Shown: positions 1-16,333 of the stretch, piece by piece
Numbering within the stretch: position 1 is the first letter of the stretch
How the letters are laid out: each line of letters begins with the position of its first letter
Assembly (NCBI RefSeq): GCF_006345805.1
Contig: NW_021825153.1
Coordinates: 1-16,435 of the forward strand
DNA from: Octopus sinensis
Lineage: Eukaryota
DNA length: 16,435 bases
Direction of reading: 5' to 3'
The notes under the pieces: generated by a model
Seen by the model: only the letters and a program-made list of their open reading frames with translations
Told to the model about the DNA's origin: nothing
Database searches by the model: none
Made by a program: the position numbers and the translations under genes

Positions 1-3
1 ATG

Positions 4-298
4 GCCAATGAGGGAGACCTCTACATGGTAGCTAGATCTGCTAGAAATAGCAGCCAAATCTCCCTCAAATCACACCCTACTCTCTTATCTATGTATATAT
101 GTATGTATGAGCCAATGAGGGAGACCTCCACATGGTAGCTAGACCTGCTAGAAATAGCAGCCAAATCTCCCTCAAATCACTCCCTACTCTCTTATCTATG
201 TATATATGTATGTATGAGCCAATGAGGGAGACCTCTACATGGTAGCAAGACCTGATAGAAATAGCAGCCAAATCTCCCTCAAATCACACCCTACTCTA
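4..298. repeat. 107-bp tandem repeat (~2.8 copies), with degenerate copies to ~540
   Basis: Unit gccaatgagggagacctctacatggtagc...cttatctatgtatatatgtatgtatga starts at 4, 111 and 218. Diverged copies at ~315-400 and ~485-540. Related opposite-strand fragment (ttggctgctatttct) at ~6726-6781. Confidence 0.9.
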
Positions 299-402
299 CT
301 CTCATATGTCTGTAAGAGCTATTGAGAGGGACATGTACATGATAGTCAGTCCTAGTAGAAATAACAGCCAAATCTCCCTCAAATCAAATTCAACTATCTT
401 AC

Positions 403-421
403 CTATCTATCTATCTCTCTC

Positions 422-471
<50 letters not shown>
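403..471. repeat. Compound microsatellite (ATCT)n/(CT)n/(TA)n/(GT)n
   Basis: Direct reading. Confidence 0.95.
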
Positions 472-474
<3 letters not shown>

Positions 475-1060
475 ACAAACTAACAAGAGACACCTCTACC
501 TGGTAGCTAGGCCAAACAGAAATAACATCAAACCAAATTTCAGTCTTCACTTTCTACCAGTGCAAAGAAACAATCTCTCAACTAGGACATTTAAATAAAG
601 AAACTTTTTTCATTGAAAAATACAAAACACGTCTTAATATGCACGCATAACCAACTTTTATCTTTTCACATATTTCAATTCACGATTACATCACTGTACA
701 TAAATACCCTTACTAAACAAGGTTTTTGAAAATTTGTCTCTATCTGTACACATATATATTCCCTTCCCATTACCGAAAGCTGAACAGTTATCTCCCTTAC
801 CCACAACAATAACAATAATAACAACAACCAATTACATCCCTATCTACTTGTGAAGTCATACACTTGTGAATTTCACCACACACAACATGGACAAAATTTC
901 TTCTAAAGAAAAAATATATATTCAAATAAGTAAAACATAATATCATGAATAGCGATAGCGAAACCGGCCGATATATTAAAAATTATATTAAAACTATGTA
1001 AGTGTGCGTATTTTCCTTTTTTAATTTCTTATATATATATATATATATATATATATAGCA

Positions 1061-1212
1061 GGTTTCTTTCAGTTTCTGTCTACTAAATCCACACACAAGA
1101 TCTTGGTCTGTTTGAGGCTGTAGAAGACATTTGCCCAAAGTGCCATGCAGTGGGACTGAACCTGGAACCATGTAGTTGGGAAGCAAGCCTCTTAACCACA
1201 CACTCACCCTGC
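1061..1212 (-). mobile_element. tRNA-derived SINE, 5' head fragment
   Basis: Reverse complement of the SINE head at 10944 (B box GTTCAGTCCC, CORE-like ttgggcaaatgtctt), next to (TA)n at 1031-1057. Confidence 0.8.
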
Positions 1213-1495
1213 ACCAATTGCTTCTGAGTAACTCCACCACCACCACCACCACCACCATGCCCACTGCCATCATGTCAATTGCAATGGCTCTCACGAATTT
1301 ATTTACAGACACCATAAAACTTGCTACCAATCTCCACCCCATCCAGTGCAAACTAACGCCCCCCCCCACTCTATCGATTGACCACCACTTCTGTCTTCCT
1401 CCTTGCAAATTCTCTTCCTACTCGTCCACTTACTACAGCTCCAACACCACAATCACATCTGTCCACGCCCTCACCCAAACACCTACACTAAATCA

Positions 1496-1618
1496 ATATA
1501 TATATATATAAAAACACACACACACATATATACATATATATGTACATATATATATGCATGTGTATATATGTATATATATATATATATGTATATATACACA
1601 CAGATGCATGCACATGTC

Positions 1619-1655
<37 letters not shown>

Positions 1656-1945
1656 CTCATACATATATGTGTGCATATTTATGTCTATATATATATATAT
1701 GTGTGTATATATATACACACACACATCCATATATACACAAAGATATATATTATATATATATATGTATATATATACACACACACACATCCATATATACACA
1801 CAGATACATGCACACTATATATATATATATATATGTATATATATACACACACACATCCATATATACACGAAGATACATGCACACATGTCTATATATATAT
1901 ATATATATACACATTTATATGTGTGTATGTGTATGTGTATATATT
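1496..1945. repeat. Large compound (TA)/(CA)/(TG) microsatellite with higher-order repeats
   Basis: The block tatatatacacacacacatccatatatacac recurs three times (~1708, ~1770, ~1840). Confidence 0.95.
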
Positions 1946-2236
1946 GATCTCTATTCATGTTCTAAGAAACCAATGAAGAACCATCATCATCATCATCACG
2001 ACGACCACCACCACCATATTCCAAGAGACGTATTCTTCCTGTTAGATTAGGCAGTGCAACACCAGCTGCACACAGCTGCGAGCCATGGCAATGGTGGTGG
2101 TGGTTTTGAAACGAGACTACACACGTGTGCGTGATTGTGGGTTTAAGAATTCAAATGCCAGTATGTACACCACCACCCCTACACACACACACACACAAGC
2201 ACGCATGCAAATGTATTTTAAAAAACAACTATGTTT

Positions 2237-2628
2237 ACTCTTTACTCTCTTGTACTCGTTTCAGTCATTTGACTGCGGCCATGCTGGAGCACCGCCTTTA
2301 GTCAAACAAATTAACCCCGGGACTTATTCTTTGTAAGCCCAGTACTTATTCTATCGGTCTCTTTTGCTGAACCGCTAAGTGACGGGGACGTAAACACACC
2401 AGCATCGGTTGTCAAGCAATGCTAGGGGGACCAACACAGACACACAAACATATACACACACATACATATACGACGGGCTTCTTTCAGTTTCCATCTACCA
2501 AATCCACTCAAAAGGCATTGGTCGGCCCAGGGCTATAGCAGAAGACACTTGCTCAAGATGCCACGCAGTGGGACTGAACCCAGAACCATGTGGTTGGTTA
2601 GCAAGCTACTTACACACACAGCCACTCC
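2237..2628 (-). mobile_element. Full-length tRNA-derived (CORE-like) SINE with 32-bp target-site duplication
   Basis: Head (A box TGGCTGTGTG, B box GTTCAGTCCC), central microsatellite and gtaaaagagt-type tail are all present. Flanked by identical atgcaaatgtattttaaaaaacaactatgttt at 2205-2236 and 2629-2660. Resembles octopus OR-type SINEs from memory. Confidence 0.9.
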
Positions 2629-2772
2629 ATGCAAATGTATTTTAAAAAACAACTATGTTTGATTTATCAAAGATTTTCCCACAATTCACTTTTACCTGTT
2701 CAGGTTTTGTTTGAAATATCAAGACTCCTAAATCCATTAGGCTGACGGCATTTTCGGATTTTTCCAGTTTAA

Positions 2773-2967
2773 CCCTTTAGCATCCAGATAATTCTGTCAA
2801 GCATAATCCTTTTTTATTCACCATGTTTTTGATTAATCTTGCATTATCTCACAACCTAGAAATCAACGATGCAACTTTTATTTTCTCAAAGGGACATGGT
2901 AGGATTTGTGTGAGAAGCCAGATCTAGCCAGTTTGGACATAAAACAGGTAGAACATGGCTGGTTTAA
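2773..2967 (+). mobile_element. TTAA/piggyBac-type MITE lacking its right TIR; a second copy starts at ~2964
   Basis: Begins TTAA-CCCTTTAGCA. The same start (ttaatcctttagca) recurs at 2964. Family recognised from memory of octopus repeats. Confidence 0.6.
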
Positions 2968-3000
2968 TCCTTTAGCATTTGGATTATTCTATCAACTCTA

Positions 3001-3520
3001 ATCCTTTTACATGTCACTGCATGGGCGAGATATAAAAGCACCTGTCGCTACATGGACACTTTACATGTCACAACATGGATGCTTTTACATGTTGCCACAT
3101 GGACAAGATATAAAAGCACCTGTTGACACATGGACACTTTATATGTCACCACATGGGAAAGACATAAAAGTCCCTGTTGCCACATGGACACTTTACATGT
3201 CACAACATGGATGTTTTTACATGTTGCCACATGGACAAGATATAAAAGCACCTGTTGACACATGGACACTTTATATGTCACCACATGGGAAAGACATAAA
3301 AGTCCCTGTTGCCACATGGACACTTTACATGTCACAACATGGATGTTTTTACATGTTGCCACATGGACAAGATATAAAAGCACCTGTTGACACATGGACA
3401 CTTTATATGTCACCACATGGAAAAGACATAAAAGTCCCTGTTGCCACATGGTAAAAAGACATAAAAGCATCTGTTGCCGCATGAGCACCCGTCGCCACAC
3501 GGATGTTTTTACATGTCACA
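3001..3520. repeat. 132-bp minisatellite (78+54-bp subunits), 3 full copies plus partial flanks
   Basis: Units start at 3053, 3185, 3317 and (partial) 3449 and are nearly identical. Confidence 0.93.
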
Positions 3521-3906
3521 GCTTGTAAAATCATTAATGTAGTACCTTGCTGGCATTGGGTTTAAATCAAACTCTCAACACCCCCCACTCACAGAGCATA
3601 TACACAAAATCAATACAAAGAAATTCATGACCATTTTCTTTTACTTCTCCTTTCATATTATTGATTTCTTCTCTCTCTCTTTTCCCCTTCCTATCCACCC
3701 ATGCCCACTAGCACAAATTTAAATACAAAGTAAAGCCCTACATGCATCCACCCTCCCATAGTCTATATGGGAGGGTGGAAGTATAGCTATCTGTATGATA
3801 AATCATAATAGTCACAGGTACCGACCATAAACCCTACAAGTTCTTCTGATTGGTATAAATTAGTAAATATCCGTTAATTAAGCACTCAACACAGCCAGAA
3901 CATTAA

Positions 3907-4127
3907 CCCTTTCATTACCATATTTCTGTTGAGATGCTCTGTGTTTCTTTCAATTAATTATAAATACAACGAAGAATTTAGTAAAATAACTTAGTTATCA
4001 TTAAGCTAGTGTTAGGAACATAAATTGTGACTAAGGTTTGGAGGAAGATTTTAATTCAGAACTAATGAAAACAAGACATTTGTACTCAGAGCCAGAGGTG
4101 GTTTCAGCCAGGTTGGTAACGAAAGGG
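3907..4127. mobile_element. Complete piggyBac-type MITE (221 bp)
   Basis: TTAA TSD at 3903-3906 and 4128-4131. TIRs CCCTTTCATTACCA / TGGTAACGAAAGGG (13/14 match). No ORF. Confidence 0.85.
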
Positions 4128-4158
4128 TTAATGCAACTTTTGCCTGAAGAAACGAACA

Positions 4159-4610
4159 CATCATCGTTTAACATCTACTTTCCGTGCTAGGACAGGTTGG
4201 ACGGTTCGACCGGGGTCTGGGGAGCCAGGCAGCTGCACCAGGCTCCAATCTTGATCTGGCAGTGTTTCTACTGCTGGATGCCCTTCCTAACGCCAACCAC
4301 TCCATGAGTGTAGTAGGTGCTTTTTACGTGCCACCGGCACAGGTGCCAGGGAGGCTGGCAATGGCAACAATCGGTTGGTGCTTTTTACGTGCCACCAGCA
4401 TGGAGGCCAGGTGAGGCTGGCAACGGCCAAGATTGGATGGTGCTTTTTACATGCCACCGGCAAGGATGCCAGACGAGGCTGGCAATGGCCACAATCGGAT
4501 GGTGCTTTTTACGTGCCACCAGCACAGAGGCCAGGTGAGGCTGGCAGCGGCCCCGATCGGTTGGTGCTTTTAACGGGCCACCGGCACAGAAGCCAGTCAA
4601 GGCAGCGCTG
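4159..4610 (-). mobile_element. RTE-clade LINE 3' UTR with an internal 61-62-bp tandem array
   Basis: Reverse complement of 13528-13704 and of the UTR following the RTE ORF end at 13953. Contains ggatgcccttcctaacgccaacc. Array units start at 4316, 4377, 4439, 4501 and 4563. Confidence 0.8.
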
Positions 4611-4811
4611 ATCTATTAATATTCTCCTCAAGGTCCATGGATTTCACAAATCATATTTGTAATATCCTAAGGATGGGGAATACAACAACTAAAACATGGA
4701 ATTTCTGGAAACGTATGTAGCAATGCATTAAAATAGTTATGAATTTCCATCTAAAGTTCTTGTTATTATTAAATATATATATATTATTTAATAAACACAA
4801 TATATGTATTT

Positions 4812-4897
4812 ATGTGCTACTATTAGTTTCATGTGCTGAGAGCATGCCAAACAGTGTTTTTTAATATGTCAGGTGTCCTAGCACAATCATCAGACAT
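4812..4897 (-). ncRNA. Degenerate type-I hammerhead-ribozyme-like motif with long stem II
   Basis: Minus strand: atgt-CUGAUGA-u-UGUGCU-[~42 nt]-AGCACA-u-GAAA-CU-aau-AG-UA-gcacau. GUA triplet present; 10.1-11.1 is a U-U mismatch; stem I is only 3-4 bp. Confidence 0.35.
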
Positions 4898-4983
4898 TGC
4901 CCCATTTTTAGTTCATTATGCCATGTGTGTAGTTTCTGATGATTGTGCTAGGACATCAGACATATATATATATATAAACTTAC

Positions 4984-5405
4984 TTGGAGAACAGAAAAGA
5001 AACGATCGTCTAGGCTAAAAAAAGGCCCTCAATGTTTGTTTCCTTGTCCTGTTTTTATTCTTTACTTGTACTGTATTTTTTTGTATTTTTATTTGTATTG
5101 TTTTTTTTTATTTGTATTGTTTTTTACGTCGTCTGTTTTTGTCACATTTTTTTCATTCCTTGTTTTTACCCCTCTGCAAAGGAATTTTATTTAATTCTTT
5201 CGCAGGAAGGGCTAGTTCGACGAGTCGTGTTCTGTCTTTACCTTCGAAACACGCTGGAGTTGAACTAGGGACAGCAGATGAAGGGGAATTTTCCTTGTGT
5301 AGTTTGTCTTGTACTCTGTTTTTTCTTTGTAAAAAATAGTCTGTTTCCATGTTTGTTTTTACGTTTTCGTTTCTTGTTGAGTTCTACGTCTATTTGTGGT
5401 GTCCA
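4984..5405 (-). mobile_element. Probable 3' fragment of a non-LTR element (basic ORF1-like C-terminus followed by an A-rich 3' end)
   Basis: Minus strand: WTPQIDVELNKKRKRKNK..., then the ORF-track peptide ...ELALPAKELNKIPLQRGKNKE*, then an A-rich tract ending gggcctttttttagcctagacgatcgtttcttttctgttctcc, which resembles a recalled octopus repeat end. Confidence 0.4.
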
Positions 5406-5481
5406 TATATAATTTTATATTGAATGTATATATAACTGTAGATGTAGGTACGTACATATATGTATGTATGCATGCATATAC

Positions 5482-5535
<54 letters not shown>

Positions 5536-5645
5536 ATTTAGGAATGGTCATTTTGCCAGTTTAGCCAATAAAAACACACGCACTATATTTGGTGTTACTT
5601 TGCTTCAGTGTTATTTATTTTTTACATTAATCTTAATCTTATTTC

Positions 5646-5689
5646 GGCAAAGTTCTTTCGTCACACTCCTGTGACCTCATCAGTGGTCC
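5646..5689 (-). ncRNA. Hammerhead motif, damaged inverted copy (sense to PAPSS)
   Basis: Same core and stem II as 6398-6442, but the 3' side reads GAAAGAAC-UU-UGCC: CUU triplet and disrupted stem I. Confidence 0.6.
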
Positions 5690-6397
5690 TTTGTTTTTCT
5701 TACTTATTTTGTGTCTCTCCTTACTAACCGTCAGCCATTTGTATTTCTATTGTATGTCTTCATTGCGCATGCTTATATCTCTATGTGCGTCTATGTTTAT
5801 TTAGTGTGTATGTGGGGGATGCCTGTAATATTTGTATCTTCTGTTTATATATGTTCATGTAATTTTTTAATTTGTATTTTTTTTTTTTTTATTTTTTTTT
5901 TTGTTTTTTTGTTTTGTTGTTTTGTTTATATTCTTATTTTGTTCATGTGTTTATATCCACCCATTATTATCATTACAAATGCTTGTATGTATGTATGCAT
6001 GTATGTATAACAACAATACTAGTAATAATAATAATAAATTGAATCGAAAAATATATATATTATTATTACTAGTATTGTTGTTATACATACATGCATACAT
6101 ACATACAGCATTTGTAATGATATAATGGGTGGATGTAAACACATGAACAAAATAAGAATAAACAAAAACAACAAAAACAAAATACAAATTACAAATTACA
6201 TGAACATATAAAATTACAAATTACATGAACATATATAAACAGAAGATACAAATATTACAGGCATCCCCCACATACACACACTAAATAAACATAAACGCAC
6301 ATAGAGATATAAGCATGCGCAATGATGACATACAATAGAAATACAAAATGGCTGACGGTTAGTAAGGAGAGACACAAATAAGAAAGAAGAAAACAAA

Positions 6398-6442
6398 GGA
6401 CCACTGATGAGGTCACAGGAGTGTGACGAAAGAACTCTGGCC
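6398..6442 (+). ncRNA. Type-I minimal hammerhead ribozyme motif
   Basis: GGACCA-CUGAUGA-G-GUCACA(GGAG)UGUGAC-GAAA-G(AA)C-UC|UGGCC. Full catalytic core, 6-bp stem II, 2-bp stem III, 5-bp stem I with a bulged A. Predicted cleavage after C6437. Confidence 0.75.
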
Positions 6443-6818
6443 GAAATAAGATTAAGATTAAAGTAAAAAATAAATATCACTGAAGCAAAGTAACACCAGT
6501 GTTTTTATTGGCTAAAGTGGCAAAATGACCATTCCGAAATACAACAATATCTGTTTCAACACACGACTTCACATAAAAAATCTTGCACAACAAATATTTA
6601 AACGTATATATATATATATATATATATATAAAGCCACGTGATTCGGAGGTGCAAGCTCCTTCACCTGCACAACCAGCTATGTGCCTTTTACCTTTCCCCA
6701 TAACAGTAAAATGCGATTTGGCAAAAACTCTTGGCTGCTATTTCTCGCACCAAGTGGAGCACCAACACAGAGGTCCTCGTTCATGACATGATATATTCGT
6801 TAGAGGTCATCCACTTAC

Positions 6819-6937
6819 CTTATCAATTAAAGCTCTCAGTATGTTGTTAATGCATTCGTCAACAGTTGTCTCCCCTGCTTTCAGGACCACATCGGGATTT
6901 TCGGGGGGTTCGTACACTGAGTCAACACCAGTGAAAG
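6819..6937 (-). CDS. PAPSS: Next coding exon (119 bp) of PAPS synthase, end of APS-kinase domain
   Basis: Joins in frame with the previous exon (T+CT = Ser): SFTGVDSVYEPPENPDVVLKAGETTVDECINNILRALIDK, matching the FTGIDSxYExPxxPELVLKT motif. Acceptor tttgtttatcgttacag; donor GTAAGT (6818-6813). Confidence 0.96.
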
Positions 6938-6989: not shown

Positions 6990-8340
6990 GGGATGGTGAC
7001 AGTGTTGATGGTGGTGGTAGTGGTGGTGATGGCAGTTGTAGTGTTGGTAGTGGTGGTTGTGATGGTGGTGGTGGGAGGTGGTGGAGATGGTTGTGGCATT
7101 GATGGAGGTGGTTGTGGTGCTGGTTGTAGTGTTGGTAGTGGTGGTTGTGATGGTGGTGGTGGTGGTGGTGGTGGAGACGGTTGTGGCATTGATGAAGATG
7201 GCTGTTGTAGCTGTGATGACTGTGGTGTTGGTTGTGATGGTGGTGTTGGTGATGGTTGTGGTGTTGGTTGTGGTGGTGTTAGCGCTAATGGTTGTCATGG
7301 TGATTGTGATGGCTGTGGTGGTGGTGGTGGTGGTGGTTGTAGTGTTGGTGATGGTAGTGTTATTACTGGTGGTTGTTGTGGTGATTGTGGCATTGATGGA
7401 GGTGGTTGTGGTGGTGGTTGTAGTAGTGTTGATAGTAGTGATGGGGTGGTGGTGGTATTTGTGGTCACGGAGATGATGGTTATGTGTGTGATGTTTATGC
7501 CGATGGTGGTGGTGGCAGCGTTGGTTGCTATGGTGGTGGTGGTGGTAGTAGTGGTATCATGCAATGTTTAGGCAACAGTAGCAGTAAAAGGCCAATTTCC
7601 TGTCCAATATAAAAGACAGTTGACTTTATTTTGGTAAATATTGACATAGTGGTGGTGGTGGTGGTGGTGGTGGTGGTGGTGGCAAAGGTGATGGTGGTGG
7701 TGGAGGCAGTTCTAATAATGAAAATGGTGGTAGTGATAGCAAAGGTGGTGTGGATGGCGCCGGGTGAAGATAATAGAGATTGGTGGTGGTGGTGGAGGTG
7801 GTGGTGGTGGTGGTGTGGTGTAGGAGCTAGCAGTAGTTGCATTGGTGATGAGGATGATGATGGTGTCAAAGGTGATGATGGTGTTGGTGGCAGTGCTGAT
7901 AATGAAAATGGTGATGGTGATAGCAAATATGGTGGTGGTGGTGGGGCTGGTGCCGGTGAAGAGAATAGAGATGGTGATGGTGTAGGAGCTAGTAGTAGTA
8001 GCATTGATGATGATGATGATGAGATGATGACGGTGAGAAAGTCGTGTGACACATAAAAATGTGGTGGAGTTGTTGGTGAAGATAGTGATGACGGCGGTGG
8101 AGACAACGACGACAATGATGGTGGTGTTGGCGGTGGTGGTGATTGTGGTACAACTGATGTTGACGATGATGACTGTTATGATGATGTTGACGAGATCATG
8201 ATGACAGTAATGATTGTGATGATAATGATGGTGGTGATGATGATGATGACGATGATGACAATGATGATGACAATGATGATGATGATGATGTTGGCGATAA
8301 TGATGATGATGATGATGATAATGACAATGTGATGTGATGT
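6990..8340. repeat. Degenerate (GGT)/(GAT)/(GTT) trinucleotide expanse
   Basis: Direct reading. Source of the poly-V/G/T/P/H pseudo-ORFs. Confidence 0.95.
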
Positions 8341-9109: not shown

Positions 9110-10545
9110 CAAATTTCGCTGAGGCGATTAAAGAAAAAAAAACAACAATATACTTTACGGCTCAACAATACAGGACACGAACATCAAAATAACAGAATCA
9201 GAAGGTATAGTACAAATAAACATACCAGAAATATTTTGGAAAATGAAAAAGACGACAATCATTTATAAAATAGTTAACAAAAAAACAAAAATCCCAGAGA
9301 AGGCCAACACAAGCAAAATAGAGAAGTGCTTGAACCCATCTGGGATCACAAAAGATATGTAACCTGGTGGAACAAATTTGCCCACATACAAGTTGTTTTC
9401 TACACCGAAGAGTTTAGCTAGACATTTTCTCAACGCTAACTCTTCACTCAGATGAACTCCAACTTACACCAGCTATCGGGGACAGAAAGTGACTAAGATC
9501 ACTCTAAACAATGTCCCCAAAATAGCCAATAGTCTATGGCTTGTAAAGGCCTTATGCGTAAAATGGCGAACTATACTATTTTGGAAACCACAGTCACAGA
9601 GCATAAAAACTGGGTGGGACAAAAATAGAATTTCTTCTACATATACATCATGAGGATATAAAAAAAATACCCACCCAGAATGTGTATCAGACGACCACAA
9701 GTTATGTGGTCGTCGATGGCAGAAGACCACGTTGCTACATATGCGGCAGTGAGCAACACTCAAAAAAGACTGCAAATCTGCCGCAAGAAAACAACAGCAA
9801 CAACAACAGCAGCCGGAAACAAAAACAAATAAACAAGGTTTACTACCCACACCACTTTTTGCAGGAACAACAACCTCACCAAACAAAACAACCACACACC
9901 AACTGAGCACCAAGAACAGAAGCAGCATCACCAACAACAACAACCAAGAATATACCAACTCCCAAACCAAGGACATCTGCCAAAAACCCACCCAGCAAAA
10001 AAAAGAAACAATTACACTCCAAATCCCCACAAAATTGACACCCTAACAACACACAACAATCCCACAATCACTCAAACAGCAAAATACCCAAACCCACATC
10101 CAAAACCGCATACACCACAACCAACGCTCCCAACCACACCAACAAACAAAACCAACACAGTCGACAATAGACCCCAATTCTTTCCCTCTTCCAGACTCCG
10201 ATTCGTCTGATCTGTCATTAGACGAAGAAGACAACAGGAAGATTGGCAAATAGCCACAGGGGGGAGAAGAAAAGGGGAAAAAAAAGAAAAGAAAAATAAC
10301 AAACAAAGCGGGAGATACACCAAAAAACCCGAAAACAAAAACATCCCAGAAAACACACACATCAACACAAACCCCCCCAAAAATGTTGACAGCCATAAAC
10401 ACAAACAACCACGACCTAATGGAACACATTAGGTCAAACACTAACATTACTGAAAACGACATAAAAACAAGTAACCACCCACATACAACACCACCACAAC
10501 ACATTAAAATAATACACGTGACACAGAACACATACAGCACCCCAA
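9110..10545 (+). pseudogene. Decayed gag-like ORF1 of a non-LTR retrotransposon (L1/Tx1-like probable) with a CCHC zinc knuckle
   Basis: Frameshifted pieces: NFAEAIKEKK; YRGQKVTKITLNNVP; EDIKKIP..VVVDGRRPRCYICGSEQH / KKDC (one base missing at ~9760 restores CX2CX4HX4C, 9733-9773); then a Q/T/N-rich linker, PLPDSDSSDLSLDEED, a stop and KKKKRK. The 5' region may extend to ~8560. Confidence 0.7.
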
Positions 10546-10775
10546 TGATGATGATGACAATGATGATGATGATAATGACGATGATGATGATGATGACAAT
10601 GATAATGACGATGATGATGATGACAATGATGATGATGATGATGATAATGACAATGATGATGATGATGATAATAATAATGATGATGATGATGATGATGATA
10701 ATAATAATGATGATGATGATGATGATGATAATGATAATGATGATGATGATAATGACAATGATGATGATAATAATA

Positions 10776-10807
<32 letters not shown>

Positions 10808-10915
10808 AATGACAATGATGATGATGATGATAATGATGACAACAGAGGTGTTGCAACAACTGATGCTGATGGTGATGATGATGGTGGTGGTGATGAAAAG
10901 AGAAATGGTTGTGAT
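10545..10915. repeat. (ATG)/(ATA)/(ACA) trinucleotide array
   Basis: Direct reading. Confidence 0.95.
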
Positions 10916-10943: not shown

Positions 10944-11230
10944 GGAGTGGCTGTGTGGTAAGTAGCTTGCTTACCAACCACATGGTTCTGGGTTCAGTCC
11001 CACTGCGTGGCACCTTGGGCAAGTGTCTTCTGCTATAGCCTCGGGCCGACCAAAGCCTTGTGAGTGGATTTGGTAGACGGAAACTGAAAGAAGCCATCAT
11101 ATATATGTGTATATATGTCTGTCTTTGTCCCCGCCAACATTACTTGACAACCAATGCTAGCGTGTTTGCATCCCCGTAACTTAGAGGTTCGGCAAAAGAG
11201 ACTGATAGAATAAGTACTAGGCTTACAAAG
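10944..11230 (+). mobile_element. tRNA-derived SINE, 3'-truncated by a (GAT)n array
   Basis: A box TGGCTGTGTGG, B box GTTCAGTCCC, CORE-like accttgggcaagt. Matches the 2237-2628 copy. Confidence 0.9.
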
Positions 11231-12070
11231 ATGATGATGATGATGATGATGATGGTGTTCACGTTATTGATGTCGATGATTGTGATGTTGATGATGATCA
11301 AAATCGCAATGATTATGATGATGATAAAGATGATGGTGATGAAGATGATGATATAAGATGATGATGATAAAGATGGTGATGAAGATGATGATAATATGAT
11401 GATGATAAAGATGATGTTGATGATGATGACGATGATAAAGATGATGGTGGTGATGATGATGATGATGATGATGATAAAGATGATGGTGGTGATGATGATG
11501 ATGATAAAGATGGTGATGAAGATGATGATATAAGATGATGTTGATGATGATGACGATGATAAAGATGATGGTGGTGATGATGATGATGATGATGATAAAG
11601 ATGATGGTGGTGATAAAGATGATGCTGGTGATGATGATGATGATGATGTGGTAATGATGATGATGATGATGATGATGATAAAGATGATGATGATGATGAT
11701 GATGATGATAAAGATGGTGATGAAGATGATGATAAAGATGATGTTGATGATGATGACGATGATAAAGATGATGGTGGTGATGATGATGATGATGATGATA
11801 AAGATGATGGTGGTGATAAAGATGATGCTGGTGATGATGATGATGATGATGGTGGTAATGATGATGATGATGATGATGATGATAAAGATGATGATGATGA
11901 TGATGATGATGGTGATGATGATAATGATGGATCAAAATCGCAATGATGATGATGATTATGACGGTCATGATTGTTATGAAGATTACCTGCGGCATGACGA
12001 CAACGACATCAACAACGATGACGAAGGTGGTGAGAAGAGCGGTGACGACGACAACAACGACAACAACAAA
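11231..12070. repeat. Large (GAT)-based array with higher-order duplications
   Basis: The block gataaagatgatgttgatgatgatgacgatgataaagatgatggtggt recurs three times. Confidence 0.95.
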
Positions 12071-12346: not shown

Positions 12347-12454
12347 AATAACCTGTGTATACCACGTCATAGGTGTACATATATATGTGTATATATGTCT
12401 GTGTATATGTATATATATGTATATATATATATGTATATATATATGTGTATATAT

Positions 12455-12488
<34 letters not shown>

Positions 12489-12718
12489 GTATATGTGTAT
12501 ATATGTATATATGATTGATTGATTCTAGTTTCAGCTCACGAGCTGTGGCCATGCTGGGGCATCATATGTATATAATGTATATAATATATATAATATATAT
12601 ATATGTATATATGTATATATATGCATATATATATATGTATATATATTATATGATCTATGTATATCTATATATATATATATATATGTGTATATGTATATAT
12701 ATGTATATATGTAATATG

Positions 12719-12760
<42 letters not shown>

Positions 12761-12957
12761 TGTGTGTATGTGGGCGTGGCTGTGTGGTAAGAAGCTTGCT
12801 TCCCAACCACATGGTTCCAGGTTCAGTCCCACTTGTGGCACCATGGGCAGGTGTCTTCTGCTATAACATTAGGCTGGCCAAAGACTCGTGAATGGATTTG
12901 GTAGACGGAAACTGAAAGAAGTCCGTTGTATAGATGTATATATATGGATATATTTGT
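12347..12957 (+). repeat. Local duplication, copy 1 (paralog at 15192-16295)
   Basis: Shared unique flank aataacct.tgtataccacgtcataggtgtac and a SINE head with shared diagnostic variants (ataacattaggctggccaaagactcgtgaatgg; tgtatagatgt; ggatatatttgtg). Confidence 0.8.
12513..12563 (-). mobile_element. Short SINE-like 3' end with (ATCA)n tail
   Basis: Minus strand gccccagcatggccacagctcgtgagctgaaactagaatcaatcaatc resembles the SINE 3' motif ccagcatggccgcag...tgaaac. Absent from the paralogous copy. Confidence 0.55.
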
Positions 12958-13200
12958 GTAGGCATGCCCGTCGTATATATGTATATATATATATGTACAT
13001 GTGTGTTTGTGTTTGTCCCCCTAGCATTGCTTGACAACTGGTGCTGGTGTGTTTATATCCCCGTTACTTAGCGGTTCAGCAAAAGAGACCGATAGAATAA
13101 GTACTGGGCTTACAAAATAATAAGTCCCGGGATCGAGTTGCTCGAGTAAAGGTGGTGCTCCAGCATGGCCGCAGTAAAATGACTGAAACAAGTAAAAGAG
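12773..13200 (+). mobile_element. Near full-length tRNA-derived SINE
   Basis: Head, central microsatellite and tail (tgactgaaacaagtaaaagag). Confidence 0.88.
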
Positions 13201-13527
13201 TATATATATAATAAATCTCTGAACGAGGTATACACAGAAGCTGCACGACAATGTGAAGTATATTTGCCACTTAAATGTGGCTGACCACTAAAGGTAGATG
13301 CTACTGTAGCTTGTAGCCCCATGAGAACATCTTCTCCAGCTGGCTATTGACACACTTTCTGTGCCCTATCGGTATTTGCAAAGGGAAGCCATCCTTCCCA
13401 TCGTCGACCTGACGTGATACGCACAGACCCGGGTTTCTGGGTATTTACCCGTCATCAGCGCATGACAATCACCAGTTTTTGATGCGATATATATATATAT
13501 ATATAGATAGATAGATATATCTGTGCA

Positions 13528-13704
13528 GGTGGCACGTAAAAAGCACCCACTACACTCACGGAGTGGTTGGCGTTAGGAAGGGCATCCAGCCGTAGAAACA
13601 CTGCAAGATCAGACTGGGCCTGATGAAGCCTTCCAGCTTCACAGACCCCAGTTGAACCGTCCAACCCATGCTAGCATGGAAAACGGACGCTAAATGACGA
13701 TGAT
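13528..13704 (+). mobile_element. RTE LINE 3' UTR fragment ending in a GAT-type tail
   Basis: ggtggcacgtaaaaagcacc...gttggcgttaggaagggcatcc...ggacgctaaatgacgatgat. Homologous to 4159-4340 (reverse). Confidence 0.8.
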
Positions 13705-13706
13705 AT

Positions 13707-13864
13707 AACTTATAAACAAGGGCAAAAGTAAAAAATTCTAATGCCAAATATGCTGAAAATAAACAAATTGTCAATAACCATATAATTATATGGTTATTGA
13801 CAATTTGTCTATTTTTGGCATATTTGGCATTAGAATTTTTTACTTTTGCCCTTGTTTATAAGTT
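13707..13864. repeat. 158-bp AT-rich palindrome with no spacer
   Basis: 79-bp arms centred at 13785/13786, with 3 mismatches. Confidence 0.95.
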
Positions 13865-14823: not shown

Positions 14824-14962
14824 ATTTAATAAGTCCAGCCCGAGCTTTCTTGTAAAGGCCCTTGATGTCTCGATTTTCACAAATCTCCAGCGATGTGTTC
14901 ACGTAACATTCGACAAATGGCAACTTGTCATCGTTATGAAGCTGGCGTGCGTTATTCCGATC
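14824..14962 (-). CDS. PAPSS: Internal coding exon (139 bp) of bifunctional PAPS synthase, APS-kinase domain
   Basis: Minus strand reads [46 protein letters not shown], matching the APS-kinase motif (DRNNARQ...[19 protein letters not shown]). Acceptor ttttcttctttccag; donor GTAAGT (14823-14818). Phase 0 start, phase 1 end. Missing from the ORF track. Confidence 0.96.
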
Positions 14963-16089: not shown

Positions 16090-16333
16090 GGCGTGGCTGT
16101 GTGGTAAGAAGCTTTCTTCCCAACCACACGGTTCCAGGTTCAGTCCCACTGTGTGGCACCATGGGCAGGTGTCTTCTGCTATAACATTAGGCTGGCCAAA
16201 GACTCGTGAATGGATTTGGTAGACGGAAACTGAAAGAAGCCCGTTGTATAGATGTATATATATATATATATATATATACGGATATATTTGTGCATGCATG
16301 TGTGTGTATGTGTGTCTGTGTTTGTCACCCAAC
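16090..16333 (+). mobile_element. SINE 5' half (part of duplication copy 2)
   Basis: Near-identical to 12773-12957. Confidence 0.85.

What the first reader, a model, noticed from the sequence alone, without database searches (positions are those of the whole stretch)
5527..6604. ~1-kb hammerhead-bearing foldback element 264 nt into a PAPSS intron
Seen: ~500-bp head-to-head inverted arms with a 24-nt spacer, (TA)n on both sides, and a hammerhead core in each arm. Known: Penelope-like elements carry minimal type-I hammerheads in their pLTRs and form inverted pLTR structures, and coleoids have extensive ADAR editing. Inference: this is a non-autonomous Penelope-like or retrozyme-like insertion that folds the PAPSS pre-mRNA into ~490 bp of dsRNA just past a splice donor. 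It could be a hyper-editing, small-RNA or splicing-modulating substrate.
Basis: partly seen in the sequence, partly recalled or inferred. Interest (0 to 1): 0.8.

Follow-up and report, generated by a model that had tools for sequence, protein, structure and literature searches.

The report
Inverted hammerhead-bearing retroelement pair in intron
A dead, non-coding mobile-element insertion of the Penelope-like kind sits as two mirror-image ~500-bp copies in an intron of a sulfate-activation (PAPSS) gene; its layout is textbook for this element class, so it is ordinary, although the intron RNA is predicted to fold into a long double-stranded hairpin.

Summary
Window 5527-6604 is a 1,078-bp insertion. 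It has a left arm (5527-6033), a 24-nt spacer, a right arm (6058-6549) and a one-sided 55-nt extension (6550-6604), and it is bracketed by (TA)n tracts. Each arm carries the same 28-nt hammerhead core, on opposite strands.

The motif goes beyond chance. A full type-I descriptor gave 0 hits in 20,000 arm shuffles. The motif also shows published hallmarks of Penelope-like-element (PLE) minimal hammerheads, although no Rfam hammerhead model matches it.

Five features match the documented anatomy of PLE insertions made by target-primed reverse transcription from both cut DNA strands:
- 3' ends facing outward
- 5' ends meeting at the centre
- a tail on one side only
- a (TA)n target
- an A-rich sense strand

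The host gene, an APS-kinase/PAPSS gene, runs on the minus strand. The element starts 214 nt past the splice donor, not 264. The pre-mRNA is predicted to form a hairpin of 456 bp.

Several things could not be tested here: copy number, linkage to an RT/GIY-YIG ORF, the organism, RNA editing and small RNAs. "Retrozyme" membership fails. The hammerhead in the sense orientation of the pre-mRNA is the degraded copy, and the duplex would sequester it.

Verdict: a real but ordinary, decayed PLE-type insertion. Any regulatory role is speculative.

The parts
5488..5526 (.). Left flanking (TA)n microsatellite; presumed half of the target tract
5527..6033 (-). Left arm: element copy in minus orientation, with its 3' end at 5527 and no tail
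5645..5692 (-). Left-arm hammerhead motif, decayed. CTGATGA is at 5683-5677, helix II at 5675-5660 and GAAA at 5659-5656. The putative cleavage site follows U at 5650. Helix I has only 2 contiguous bp. This is the copy in sense orientation in the PAPSS pre-mRNA.
6034..6057 (.). 24-nt unique spacer at the centre, where the two 5' ends meet. (AT)5 runs 6051-6060.
6058..6549 (+). Right arm: element copy in plus orientation, with an A-rich sense strand. It contains an exact 25-nt tandem duplication at 6186-6235 that the left arm lacks.
6398..6442 (+). Right-arm minimal type-I hammerhead motif. Helix I pairs GG-A-CCA (6398-6403) with UGGCC (6438-6442). CUGAUGA is at 6404-6410, followed by an extra G at 6411. 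Helix II is GUCACA/UGUGAC with a GGAG loop (6412-6427). GAAA is at 6428-6431. Helix III is G-AA-C plus U (6432-6436). C17 is at 6437, with putative cleavage between 6437 and 6438.
6550..6604 (+). One-sided 55-nt A/C-rich extension ('tail') beyond the end of the inverted repeat
   Evidence: compare PMC8557442 and PMC11167929
6605..6630 (.). Right flanking (TA)n microsatellite
6819..6937 (-). PAPSS exon encoding the C-terminal end of the APS-kinase domain (..SFTGVDSVYEPPENPDVVLKAG..LIDK). The GTAAGT donor is at 6818-6813.
14824..14962 (-). Upstream PAPSS exon ([18 protein letters not shown]), 66% identical to human PAPSS1 residues 137-183

Best explanation
This is a decayed, non-coding insertion derived from a Penelope-like retroelement (PLE). 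It is either the 3'-terminal/pLTR part of a PLE or a short non-autonomous element mobilised by one.

Inferred mechanism: a GIY-YIG endonuclease cut both strands of a (TA)n microsatellite in the PAPSS intron, and reverse transcription was primed from both exposed 3'-OH ends. That would leave two copies with their 3' ends against the flanks and their 5' ends meeting at the centre. One copy would have started at the outer of two initiation sites and so kept a 55-nt tail. The other would have started at the inner site and has no tail.

Each copy carries a minimal type-I hammerhead about 110 nt from its 3' end.

Today the element does nothing autonomous. It has no ORF. Its two hammerheads lie on opposite strands, so they cannot form the dimer that such minimal motifs need. 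The copy in sense orientation in the PAPSS transcript has lost helix I. Its one predictable effect is passive: the minus-strand pre-mRNA should fold into a hairpin of about 456 bp, starting 214 nt after the splice donor. That is the kind of intronic inverted-repeat dsRNA that ADARs commonly edit.

Shown: the sequence anatomy, the motif statistics, the gene context and the predicted fold. Inferred: the insertion mechanism, the PLE family assignment and any RNA-level consequence.
For: - The inverted arms, spacer, one-sided extension and flanking (TA)n tracts are all present.
- The hammerhead core plus a helix II of at least 4 bp appeared in 8 of 20,000 arm shuffles. The full descriptor appeared in 0 of 20,000 arm shuffles and 0 of 500 window shuffles. 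The only hits in the window are the two arm sites.
- The isolated right-arm motif folds at minimum free energy into helix I (5 bp with one bulge) and helix II (6 bp).
[quoted passage not shown] That paper also reports paired motifs 100-700 bp apart on opposite strands; here they are 721 nt apart.
- PMC8557442 describes inverted 5'-truncated copies, a tail at one end only, and a (TA)n target bias.
- PMC11167929 shows that a purified PLE protein cleaves and extends both DNA strands. It also shows that the tail equals the interval between two RT start sites, in an AC-rich region roughly 90 nt past the hammerhead cut. Here the 3' ends lie 112 and 167 nt past the putative cut site.
- The sense strand is A-rich.
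- The arms differ by 3.7% plus indels, which argues against a recent artefact.
Against: - No Rfam hammerhead family matches, even at E<=10 on a 101-nt slice.
- The helix III loop (AA) is not palindromic, so even a dimer would pair poorly.
- There is no RT or GIY-YIG coding remnant in the element or in the larger ORFs of the window.
- No second copy was found in the 16-kb window or in any reachable collection, so repetitiveness is unproven.
- The tail is 55 nt, against the 30-40 nt usually reported.
- The two arms end within 24 nt of each other at the centre. That is unexpected for independent 5' truncations. It needs either a short full-length template or a fold-back step.
Confidence: 0.65

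Rival explanations
1. A single 5'-truncated PLE or hammerhead-bearing copy (the right arm plus tail) inserted first. The left arm arose later, by a local fold-back or template-switch inverted duplication at the DNA level, helped by self-complementary (TA)n/(AT)n tracts.
For: The arms meet almost symmetrically around a 24-nt spacer, as fold-back priming produces. (AT)5 sits at the centre (6051-6060) and (TA)n lies at the outer edge. The central 50 nt are 100% complementary.
Against: This reading needs a second event whose outer breakpoint happens to land exactly at a (TA)n tract and 55 nt short of the first copy's end. Both-strand priming by a PLE explains the inversion, the tail asymmetry and the shared (TA)n target in one step.
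Confidence: 0.13
2. A foldback or MITE-type DNA transposon with ~500-bp terminal inverted repeats and a TA target-site duplication (5529-6547). On this reading, 6550-6604 is host sequence and the right-hand (TA)n tract is a coincidence.
For: The outermost repeat bases, TA...TA, could be a TA duplication. (TA)n tracts are common in this window, with 13 perfect tracts.
Against: A hammerhead motif with PLE-specific traits in each arm is not expected in a DNA transposon. The strong A/T strand asymmetry of each arm fits a retro-copied sense strand. Only about 8% of the window lies within 60 nt of an unrelated (TA)n tract.
Confidence: 0.1
3. An assembly artefact: a chimeric palindromic read or a mis-join.
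For: PMC8557442 notes that complex PLE insertions often cause assembly problems. The homopolymer-rich patch (5860-5930 against 6150-6235) is error-prone.
Against: The palindrome is short and precisely bounded. Different unique sequence lies on each side, including an intact exon and donor. The arms differ by 15 substitutions, a 12-nt indel and a 25-nt duplication. A self-copied read would not show that.
Confidence: 0.05

Closest known systems
EN+ Penelope-like element insertions (Penelope/Poseidon and Neptune clades) with pLTR hammerheads
   Same: A minimal type-I hammerhead lies near the 3' end. The copies are inverted and head-to-head with 3' ends outward. There is an extension on one side only. 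The target is AT-rich (TA)n. The sense strand is A-rich.
   Different: No RT/GIY-YIG ORF is present or shown to be linked. The tail is 55 nt rather than 30-40 nt. The arms are almost equal in length. Family copy number is unknown. PMC8557442 names a (TA)n bias for Naiads and proposes that the Neptune EN linker mediates such a bias; Naiads lack canonical hammerheads. A Neptune-like source is therefore only a guess.
PLE minimal hammerhead (min-HHR; Cervera and de la Pena 2014, PMC4209133)
   Same: [quoted passage not shown]
   Different: Loop 3 (AA) is not palindromic. The left-arm copy has lost helix I. There is no match to Rfam hammerhead models. Activity is untested.
Metazoan non-LTR retrozymes (PMC7229834; bioRxiv 10.64898/2026.07.22.740005)
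   Same: A short, non-coding, AT-rich element that carries a hammerhead and is probably mobilised by PLE machinery.
   Different: Retrozymes are tandem direct repeats of 150-450 bp with canonical hammerheads on one strand, and they yield circRNAs. This element is an inverted pair with minimal hammerheads on opposite strands, so a circle cannot be excised. In vertebrates retrozymes are reported to be depleted from introns.
Intronic inverted-repeat dsRNA, such as inverted Alu pairs, as ADAR substrates
   Same: Two young, nearby, inverted repeat copies in one transcript are predicted to form long dsRNA. PMC9989829 reports this as the main A-to-I target across metazoans.
   Different: No expression or editing data are available here. 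The spacer is unusually short (24 nt), so the structure is a near-perfect hairpin.

Membership tests
Penelope-like element (EN+) insertion | Hammerhead motif in the terminal (pLTR) region | tested here: met
   The full descriptor hits only the arm sites and gave 0 hits in 20,000 shuffles. The traits match PMC4209133.
Penelope-like element (EN+) insertion | An ORF with a telomerase-like RT and a GIY-YIG endonuclease, in this copy or in autonomous family members | not testable with these tools
   This copy has no ORF, and no Pfam RT/EN domain was found in the window's ORFs.
Penelope-like element (EN+) insertion | Complex tandem or inverted arrangement, with an inverted copy adjoining at the 5' end | tested here: met
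   Head-to-head arms with 3' ends outward. Orientation follows from the hammerhead strand and the A-rich strand.
Penelope-like element (EN+) insertion | An optional 30-40-bp tail at one end only | tested here: inconclusive
   A one-sided A/C-rich extension exists at 6550-6604, but it is 55 nt long. Without other copies it cannot be proven to belong to the element rather than the host.
Penelope-like element (EN+) insertion | AT-rich or (TA)n microsatellite target | tested here: met
   (TA)19 abuts the left end and (TA)13 abuts the right end.
Penelope-like element (EN+) insertion | Dispersed multi-copy family | not testable with these tools
   There is no other copy in the window. No eukaryotic genome collection is available.
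Type-I hammerhead ribozyme | Conserved core CUGANGA / GAAA, with an NUH cleavage triplet and three helices | tested here: met
   The right arm has a 5-bp helix I with a bulge, a 6-bp helix II, a 2-bp helix III and a CUC site. The left arm has only 2 bp of helix I.
Type-I hammerhead ribozyme | Match to a curated Rfam hammerhead covariance model | tested here: not met
   No hammerhead family was reported at E<=1 on the whole window or at E<=10 on 6370-6470.
Type-I hammerhead ribozyme | Palindromic 15.2-16.2 / loop 3 that allows a dimeric helix III | tested here: inconclusive
   G15.2 and C16.2 are complementary, but the AA loop is not palindromic (read from the sequence; criterion).
Type-I hammerhead ribozyme | Self-cleavage activity | not testable with these tools
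   This needs an in vitro transcription assay.
Metazoan non-LTR retrozyme | Tandem direct repeats (150-450 bp) with hammerheads on the same strand | tested here: not met
   There are only two copies, they are inverted, and the hammerheads are on opposite strands.
Metazoan non-LTR retrozyme | Canonical type-I hammerhead (helix I 6 bp, helix II 4 bp, loop-loop contacts) | tested here: not met
   Helix II is 6 bp with a bulged G, and helix I is short with no defined loop 1.
Foldback / MITE DNA transposon | Terminal inverted repeats that reach both ends of the insertion, with a target-site duplication | tested here: inconclusive
   A TA duplication is possible at 5527-5528 and 6548-6549. If the insertion filled one (TA)n tract, the right end (6604) lies outside the repeat.

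The most novel reading that the evidence does not exclude
The arms are full-length copies of a short (~510-565 nt) non-autonomous element that carries a hammerhead and is mobilised by a PLE. That would be a solo, SINE-like relative of animal retrozymes. The near-perfect 456-bp intronic hairpin, 214 nt from the donor, would then be a heavily edited or diced dsRNA that affects PAPSS splicing or expression.
Probability: 0.07. Interest if true: 0.5.

Novelty: new member of a known kind. Interest (0 to 1): 0.2.

Why it matters
Taken alone, this is one more decayed insertion of a described class of mobile element. It is a clean single-locus illustration of features that recent biochemistry attributes to PLE integration: priming from both strands, two start sites that leave a one-sided tail, and a (TA)n target. 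It would serve as a seed for annotating the family in its genome. If the host gene is well expressed, the hairpin is a convenient natural substrate for asking how a long intronic dsRNA next to a donor site is handled, whether by editing, dicing or splicing kinetics. Nothing here shows that it is handled in any special way.

Tried and rejected
- Rfam scans found no hammerhead family, either on the whole window at E<=1 or on a 101-nt slice at E<=10. The miRNA-type hits are microsatellite or palindrome artefacts well below the gathering scores.
- I tried to find other copies through spurious ORFs. The 88-aa arm ORF had no candidates in the protein collection.
- Exact-pattern scans for the hammerhead string gave 0 hits in metagenome, prokaryote-genome and viral contigs. 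A 22-mer from the arm also gave 0 hits in metagenome contigs.
- I tried to identify the organism and orthologous loci. A 41-aa exon peptide found nothing. An 86-aa two-exon peptide found only 10 distant metagenomic APS kinases. An exact-ORF look-up was not on record. The coleoid attribution, presence or absence in relatives, and copy number therefore remain untested.
- blastn and nhmmer of the arm against the rest of the window gave only low-complexity matches.
- Pfam on ten larger ORFs gave no RT, endonuclease or transposase. The hits to the tandem-repeat ORF are spurious.
- There are no tRNA genes in the window.
- The supplement of PMC8557442 is not held, so its consensus sequences could not be compared.
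- I rejected a retrozyme reading and active self-cleavage in the PAPSS transcript. The sense-strand copy is degenerate, and it would be paired with its antisense partner in the hairpin.

Full report
**Observation**

The region 5527-6604 contains a genuine head-to-head inverted repeat. The left arm is 5527-6033 and the right arm is 6058-6549. They are separated by 24 nt, and the central 50 nt are perfectly complementary.

A global alignment of the right arm with the reverse complement of the left arm gave 451 matches, 36 mismatches and 80 gap columns. Most disagreement lies in one A/T-rich low-complexity patch. Other differences are:
- a 25-nt exact tandem duplication found only in the right arm (6186-6235)
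- a 12-nt indel found only in the left arm

Outside the low-complexity patch the arms differ at 15 of 401 aligned positions (3.7%) and by 7 indel events.

The right side carries 55 further nucleotides (6550-6604) with no counterpart on the left. Perfect (TA)n tracts abut the unit at 5488-5525 and 6605-6630. Only 8-10% of the window lies within 60 nt of such a tract.

**Hammerhead**

The 28-nt string CTGATGAGGTCACAGGAGTGTGACGAAA occurs once in each arm, on opposite strands: 5656-5683 (-) and 6404-6431 (+). It gave no match in 200 shuffles.

I wrote a type-I descriptor with these requirements:
- CUGANGA, followed by 0 or 1 extra nucleotide
- helix II of at least 4 bp
- GAAA
- a 15.2/16.2 pair with a loop of 0-4 nt
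- U16.1 and H17
- helix I of at least 3 bp

It finds only the right-arm site in the whole window. The left-arm site passes only when helix I is relaxed to 2 bp. Among dinucleotide-preserving shuffles, core plus helix II arose in 8 of 20,000 arm shuffles and 19 of 500 window shuffles. The full motif arose in none.

The isolated right-arm RNA folds at minimum free energy into helix I (GG-A-CCA / UGGCC, 5 bp with one bulge) and helix II (GUCACA/UGUGAC, GGAG loop). Putative cleavage follows C6437 (triplet CUC).

[quoted passage not shown] They also describe a long helix II and a short helix I for these motifs. They further note pairs of motifs 100-700 bp apart on opposite strands. This motif has the extra G, the G-C pair, a 6-bp helix II and a short helix I, and the two copies are 721 nt apart on opposite strands. 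Its loop 3 (AA) is not palindromic.

No Rfam hammerhead model reports it, even at E<=10 on a 101-nt slice. It is therefore a minimal, non-canonical variant, and its activity is unknown.

**Gene context**

- 14962-14824: 66% identity to residues 137-183, E=6e-16
- 6937-6819: residues 182-223

. The second exon also reaches the Pfam APS_kinase threshold.

The donor GTAAGT begins at 6818. The insertion therefore starts 214 nt into the intron, or 269 nt if measured to the end of the repeat. No further PAPSS exon lies in 1-6818.

Because the gene is on the minus strand, the hammerhead in sense orientation in the pre-mRNA is the degraded left-arm copy.

**What it is**

Three published descriptions fit the anatomy.
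1. PLE insertions are often 5'-truncated and carry an inverted copy at the 5' end. They have a 30-40-bp tail at one end only. A (TA)n target bias is reported for Naiads, and a Neptune EN linker has been proposed to mediate such a bias. Canonical PLEs carry hammerheads in their pLTRs (PMC8557442).
2. A purified PLE protein cleaves and extends both DNA strands, prefers AT-rich DNA, and starts reverse transcription at two adjacent internal sites. The interval between those sites corresponds to the tail. The sites lie in an AC-rich region about 90 nt past the hammerhead cut (PMC11167929).
3. Priming from both strands would place two copies with 3' ends at the flanks and 5' ends at the centre. This step is my inference, and it is the arrangement seen here. 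Orientation is given by the hammerhead strand and the A-rich sense strand.

Here the two 3' ends lie 112 nt and 167 nt past the putative cut site, and the 55-nt difference between them is A/C-rich.

I therefore read the unit as a single PLE-type integration into one (TA)n tract. The near-equal arm lengths suggest one of two things. The template may have been a short (~510-565 nt) non-autonomous RNA copied in full twice. Alternatively, one cDNA may have switched onto the other or folded back. I cannot separate these alternatives without other copies.

**How it works now**

The element has no ORF. Its hammerheads are on opposite strands, so they cannot form the cis dimer that minimal motifs need. 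The arms have diverged by about 4%. It is a dead insertion.

The minus-strand RNA of 5527-6549 is predicted to form one hairpin:
- 456 arm-to-arm pairs
- longest perfect run 56 bp
- -687 kcal/mol
- -724 kcal/mol when the flanks are included

That hairpin would hold the sense hammerhead in duplex with its antisense partner.

Such nearby inverted young repeats are the usual A-to-I editing substrate across metazoans (PMC9989829). Editing is a reasonable expectation if the gene is expressed, but it would be neither special nor demonstrated here.

**Rivals**

- A later fold-back duplication of a single PLE copy (0.13). This fits the symmetry, but it needs a second event that ends exactly at a (TA)n tract.
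- A long-TIR foldback/MITE with a TA duplication (0.10). This is not excluded by the termini, but it does not explain the PLE-type hammerhead or the strand asymmetry.
- An assembly artefact (0.05). This is unlikely given the unique flanks and the substitutions and indels between the arms.

**Limits**

The source genome and its relatives could not be reached. Protein-index, exact-ORF and DNA-pattern routes all returned nothing useful, and the window holds no second copy. Copy number, linkage to RT-GIY-YIG, the organism (the coleoid attribution), insertion polymorphism, editing and small RNAs remain untested.

**Verdict**

The Penelope-like interpretation is well supported by anatomy and motif statistics, but family membership is not proven. 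The retrozyme label fails. A regulatory role is speculative. This is a new member of a known kind, of low interest.

Noticed in passing
window 2330-2613 (+); 10958-11231, 12835-13116, 16104-16267 (inverted relative to the first): A dispersed SINE-like repeat of about 140-280 nt is present in at least four copies at 80-94% identity. All lie in PAPSS introns or flanks. No tRNA gene was detected by ARAGORN.
   Followed up: partly
window 4252-4342 vs 13521-13611; tandem array 4316-4596: A second repeat family. The two segments are 95% complementary, and the first adjoins a 62-nt tandem array of 4.5 units.
   Followed up: no
window 13740-13831: A near-perfect palindrome of about 92 nt with no loop. 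It scored as a plant miRNA family far below the gathering score, so it may be a small MITE-like hairpin.
   Followed up: no
window 7009-7456, 8155-8339, 10545-10839, 11230-11929: Very long imperfect trinucleotide arrays, (TGG)n, (TGA)n, (ATG)n and (GAT)n, fill much of the intron upstream of the 6937-6819 exon.
   Followed up: no
window 3006-3451 and 4-414: Two minisatellites: a 132-nt unit x3.4 at 96% identity, and a 107-nt unit x3.9 at 85% identity.
   Followed up: no
window 1496-1950 and 12379-12758: Large compound (TA)n/(TG)n microsatellite blocks account for nearly all the Rfam miRNA-type hits (mir-297, mir-3149, mir-466). All are below the gathering scores, so these are artefacts.
   Followed up: yes
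window 6051-6060: (AT)5 sits at the junction of the spacer and the right arm, at the centre of the palindrome. It could be microhomology used in joining or fold-back, or part of the element's 5' end.
   Followed up: no
window 4864-4894 / 4935-4965: A small 31-nt inverted repeat, 94% complementary with a 40-nt loop, lies downstream in the same intron.
   Followed up: no
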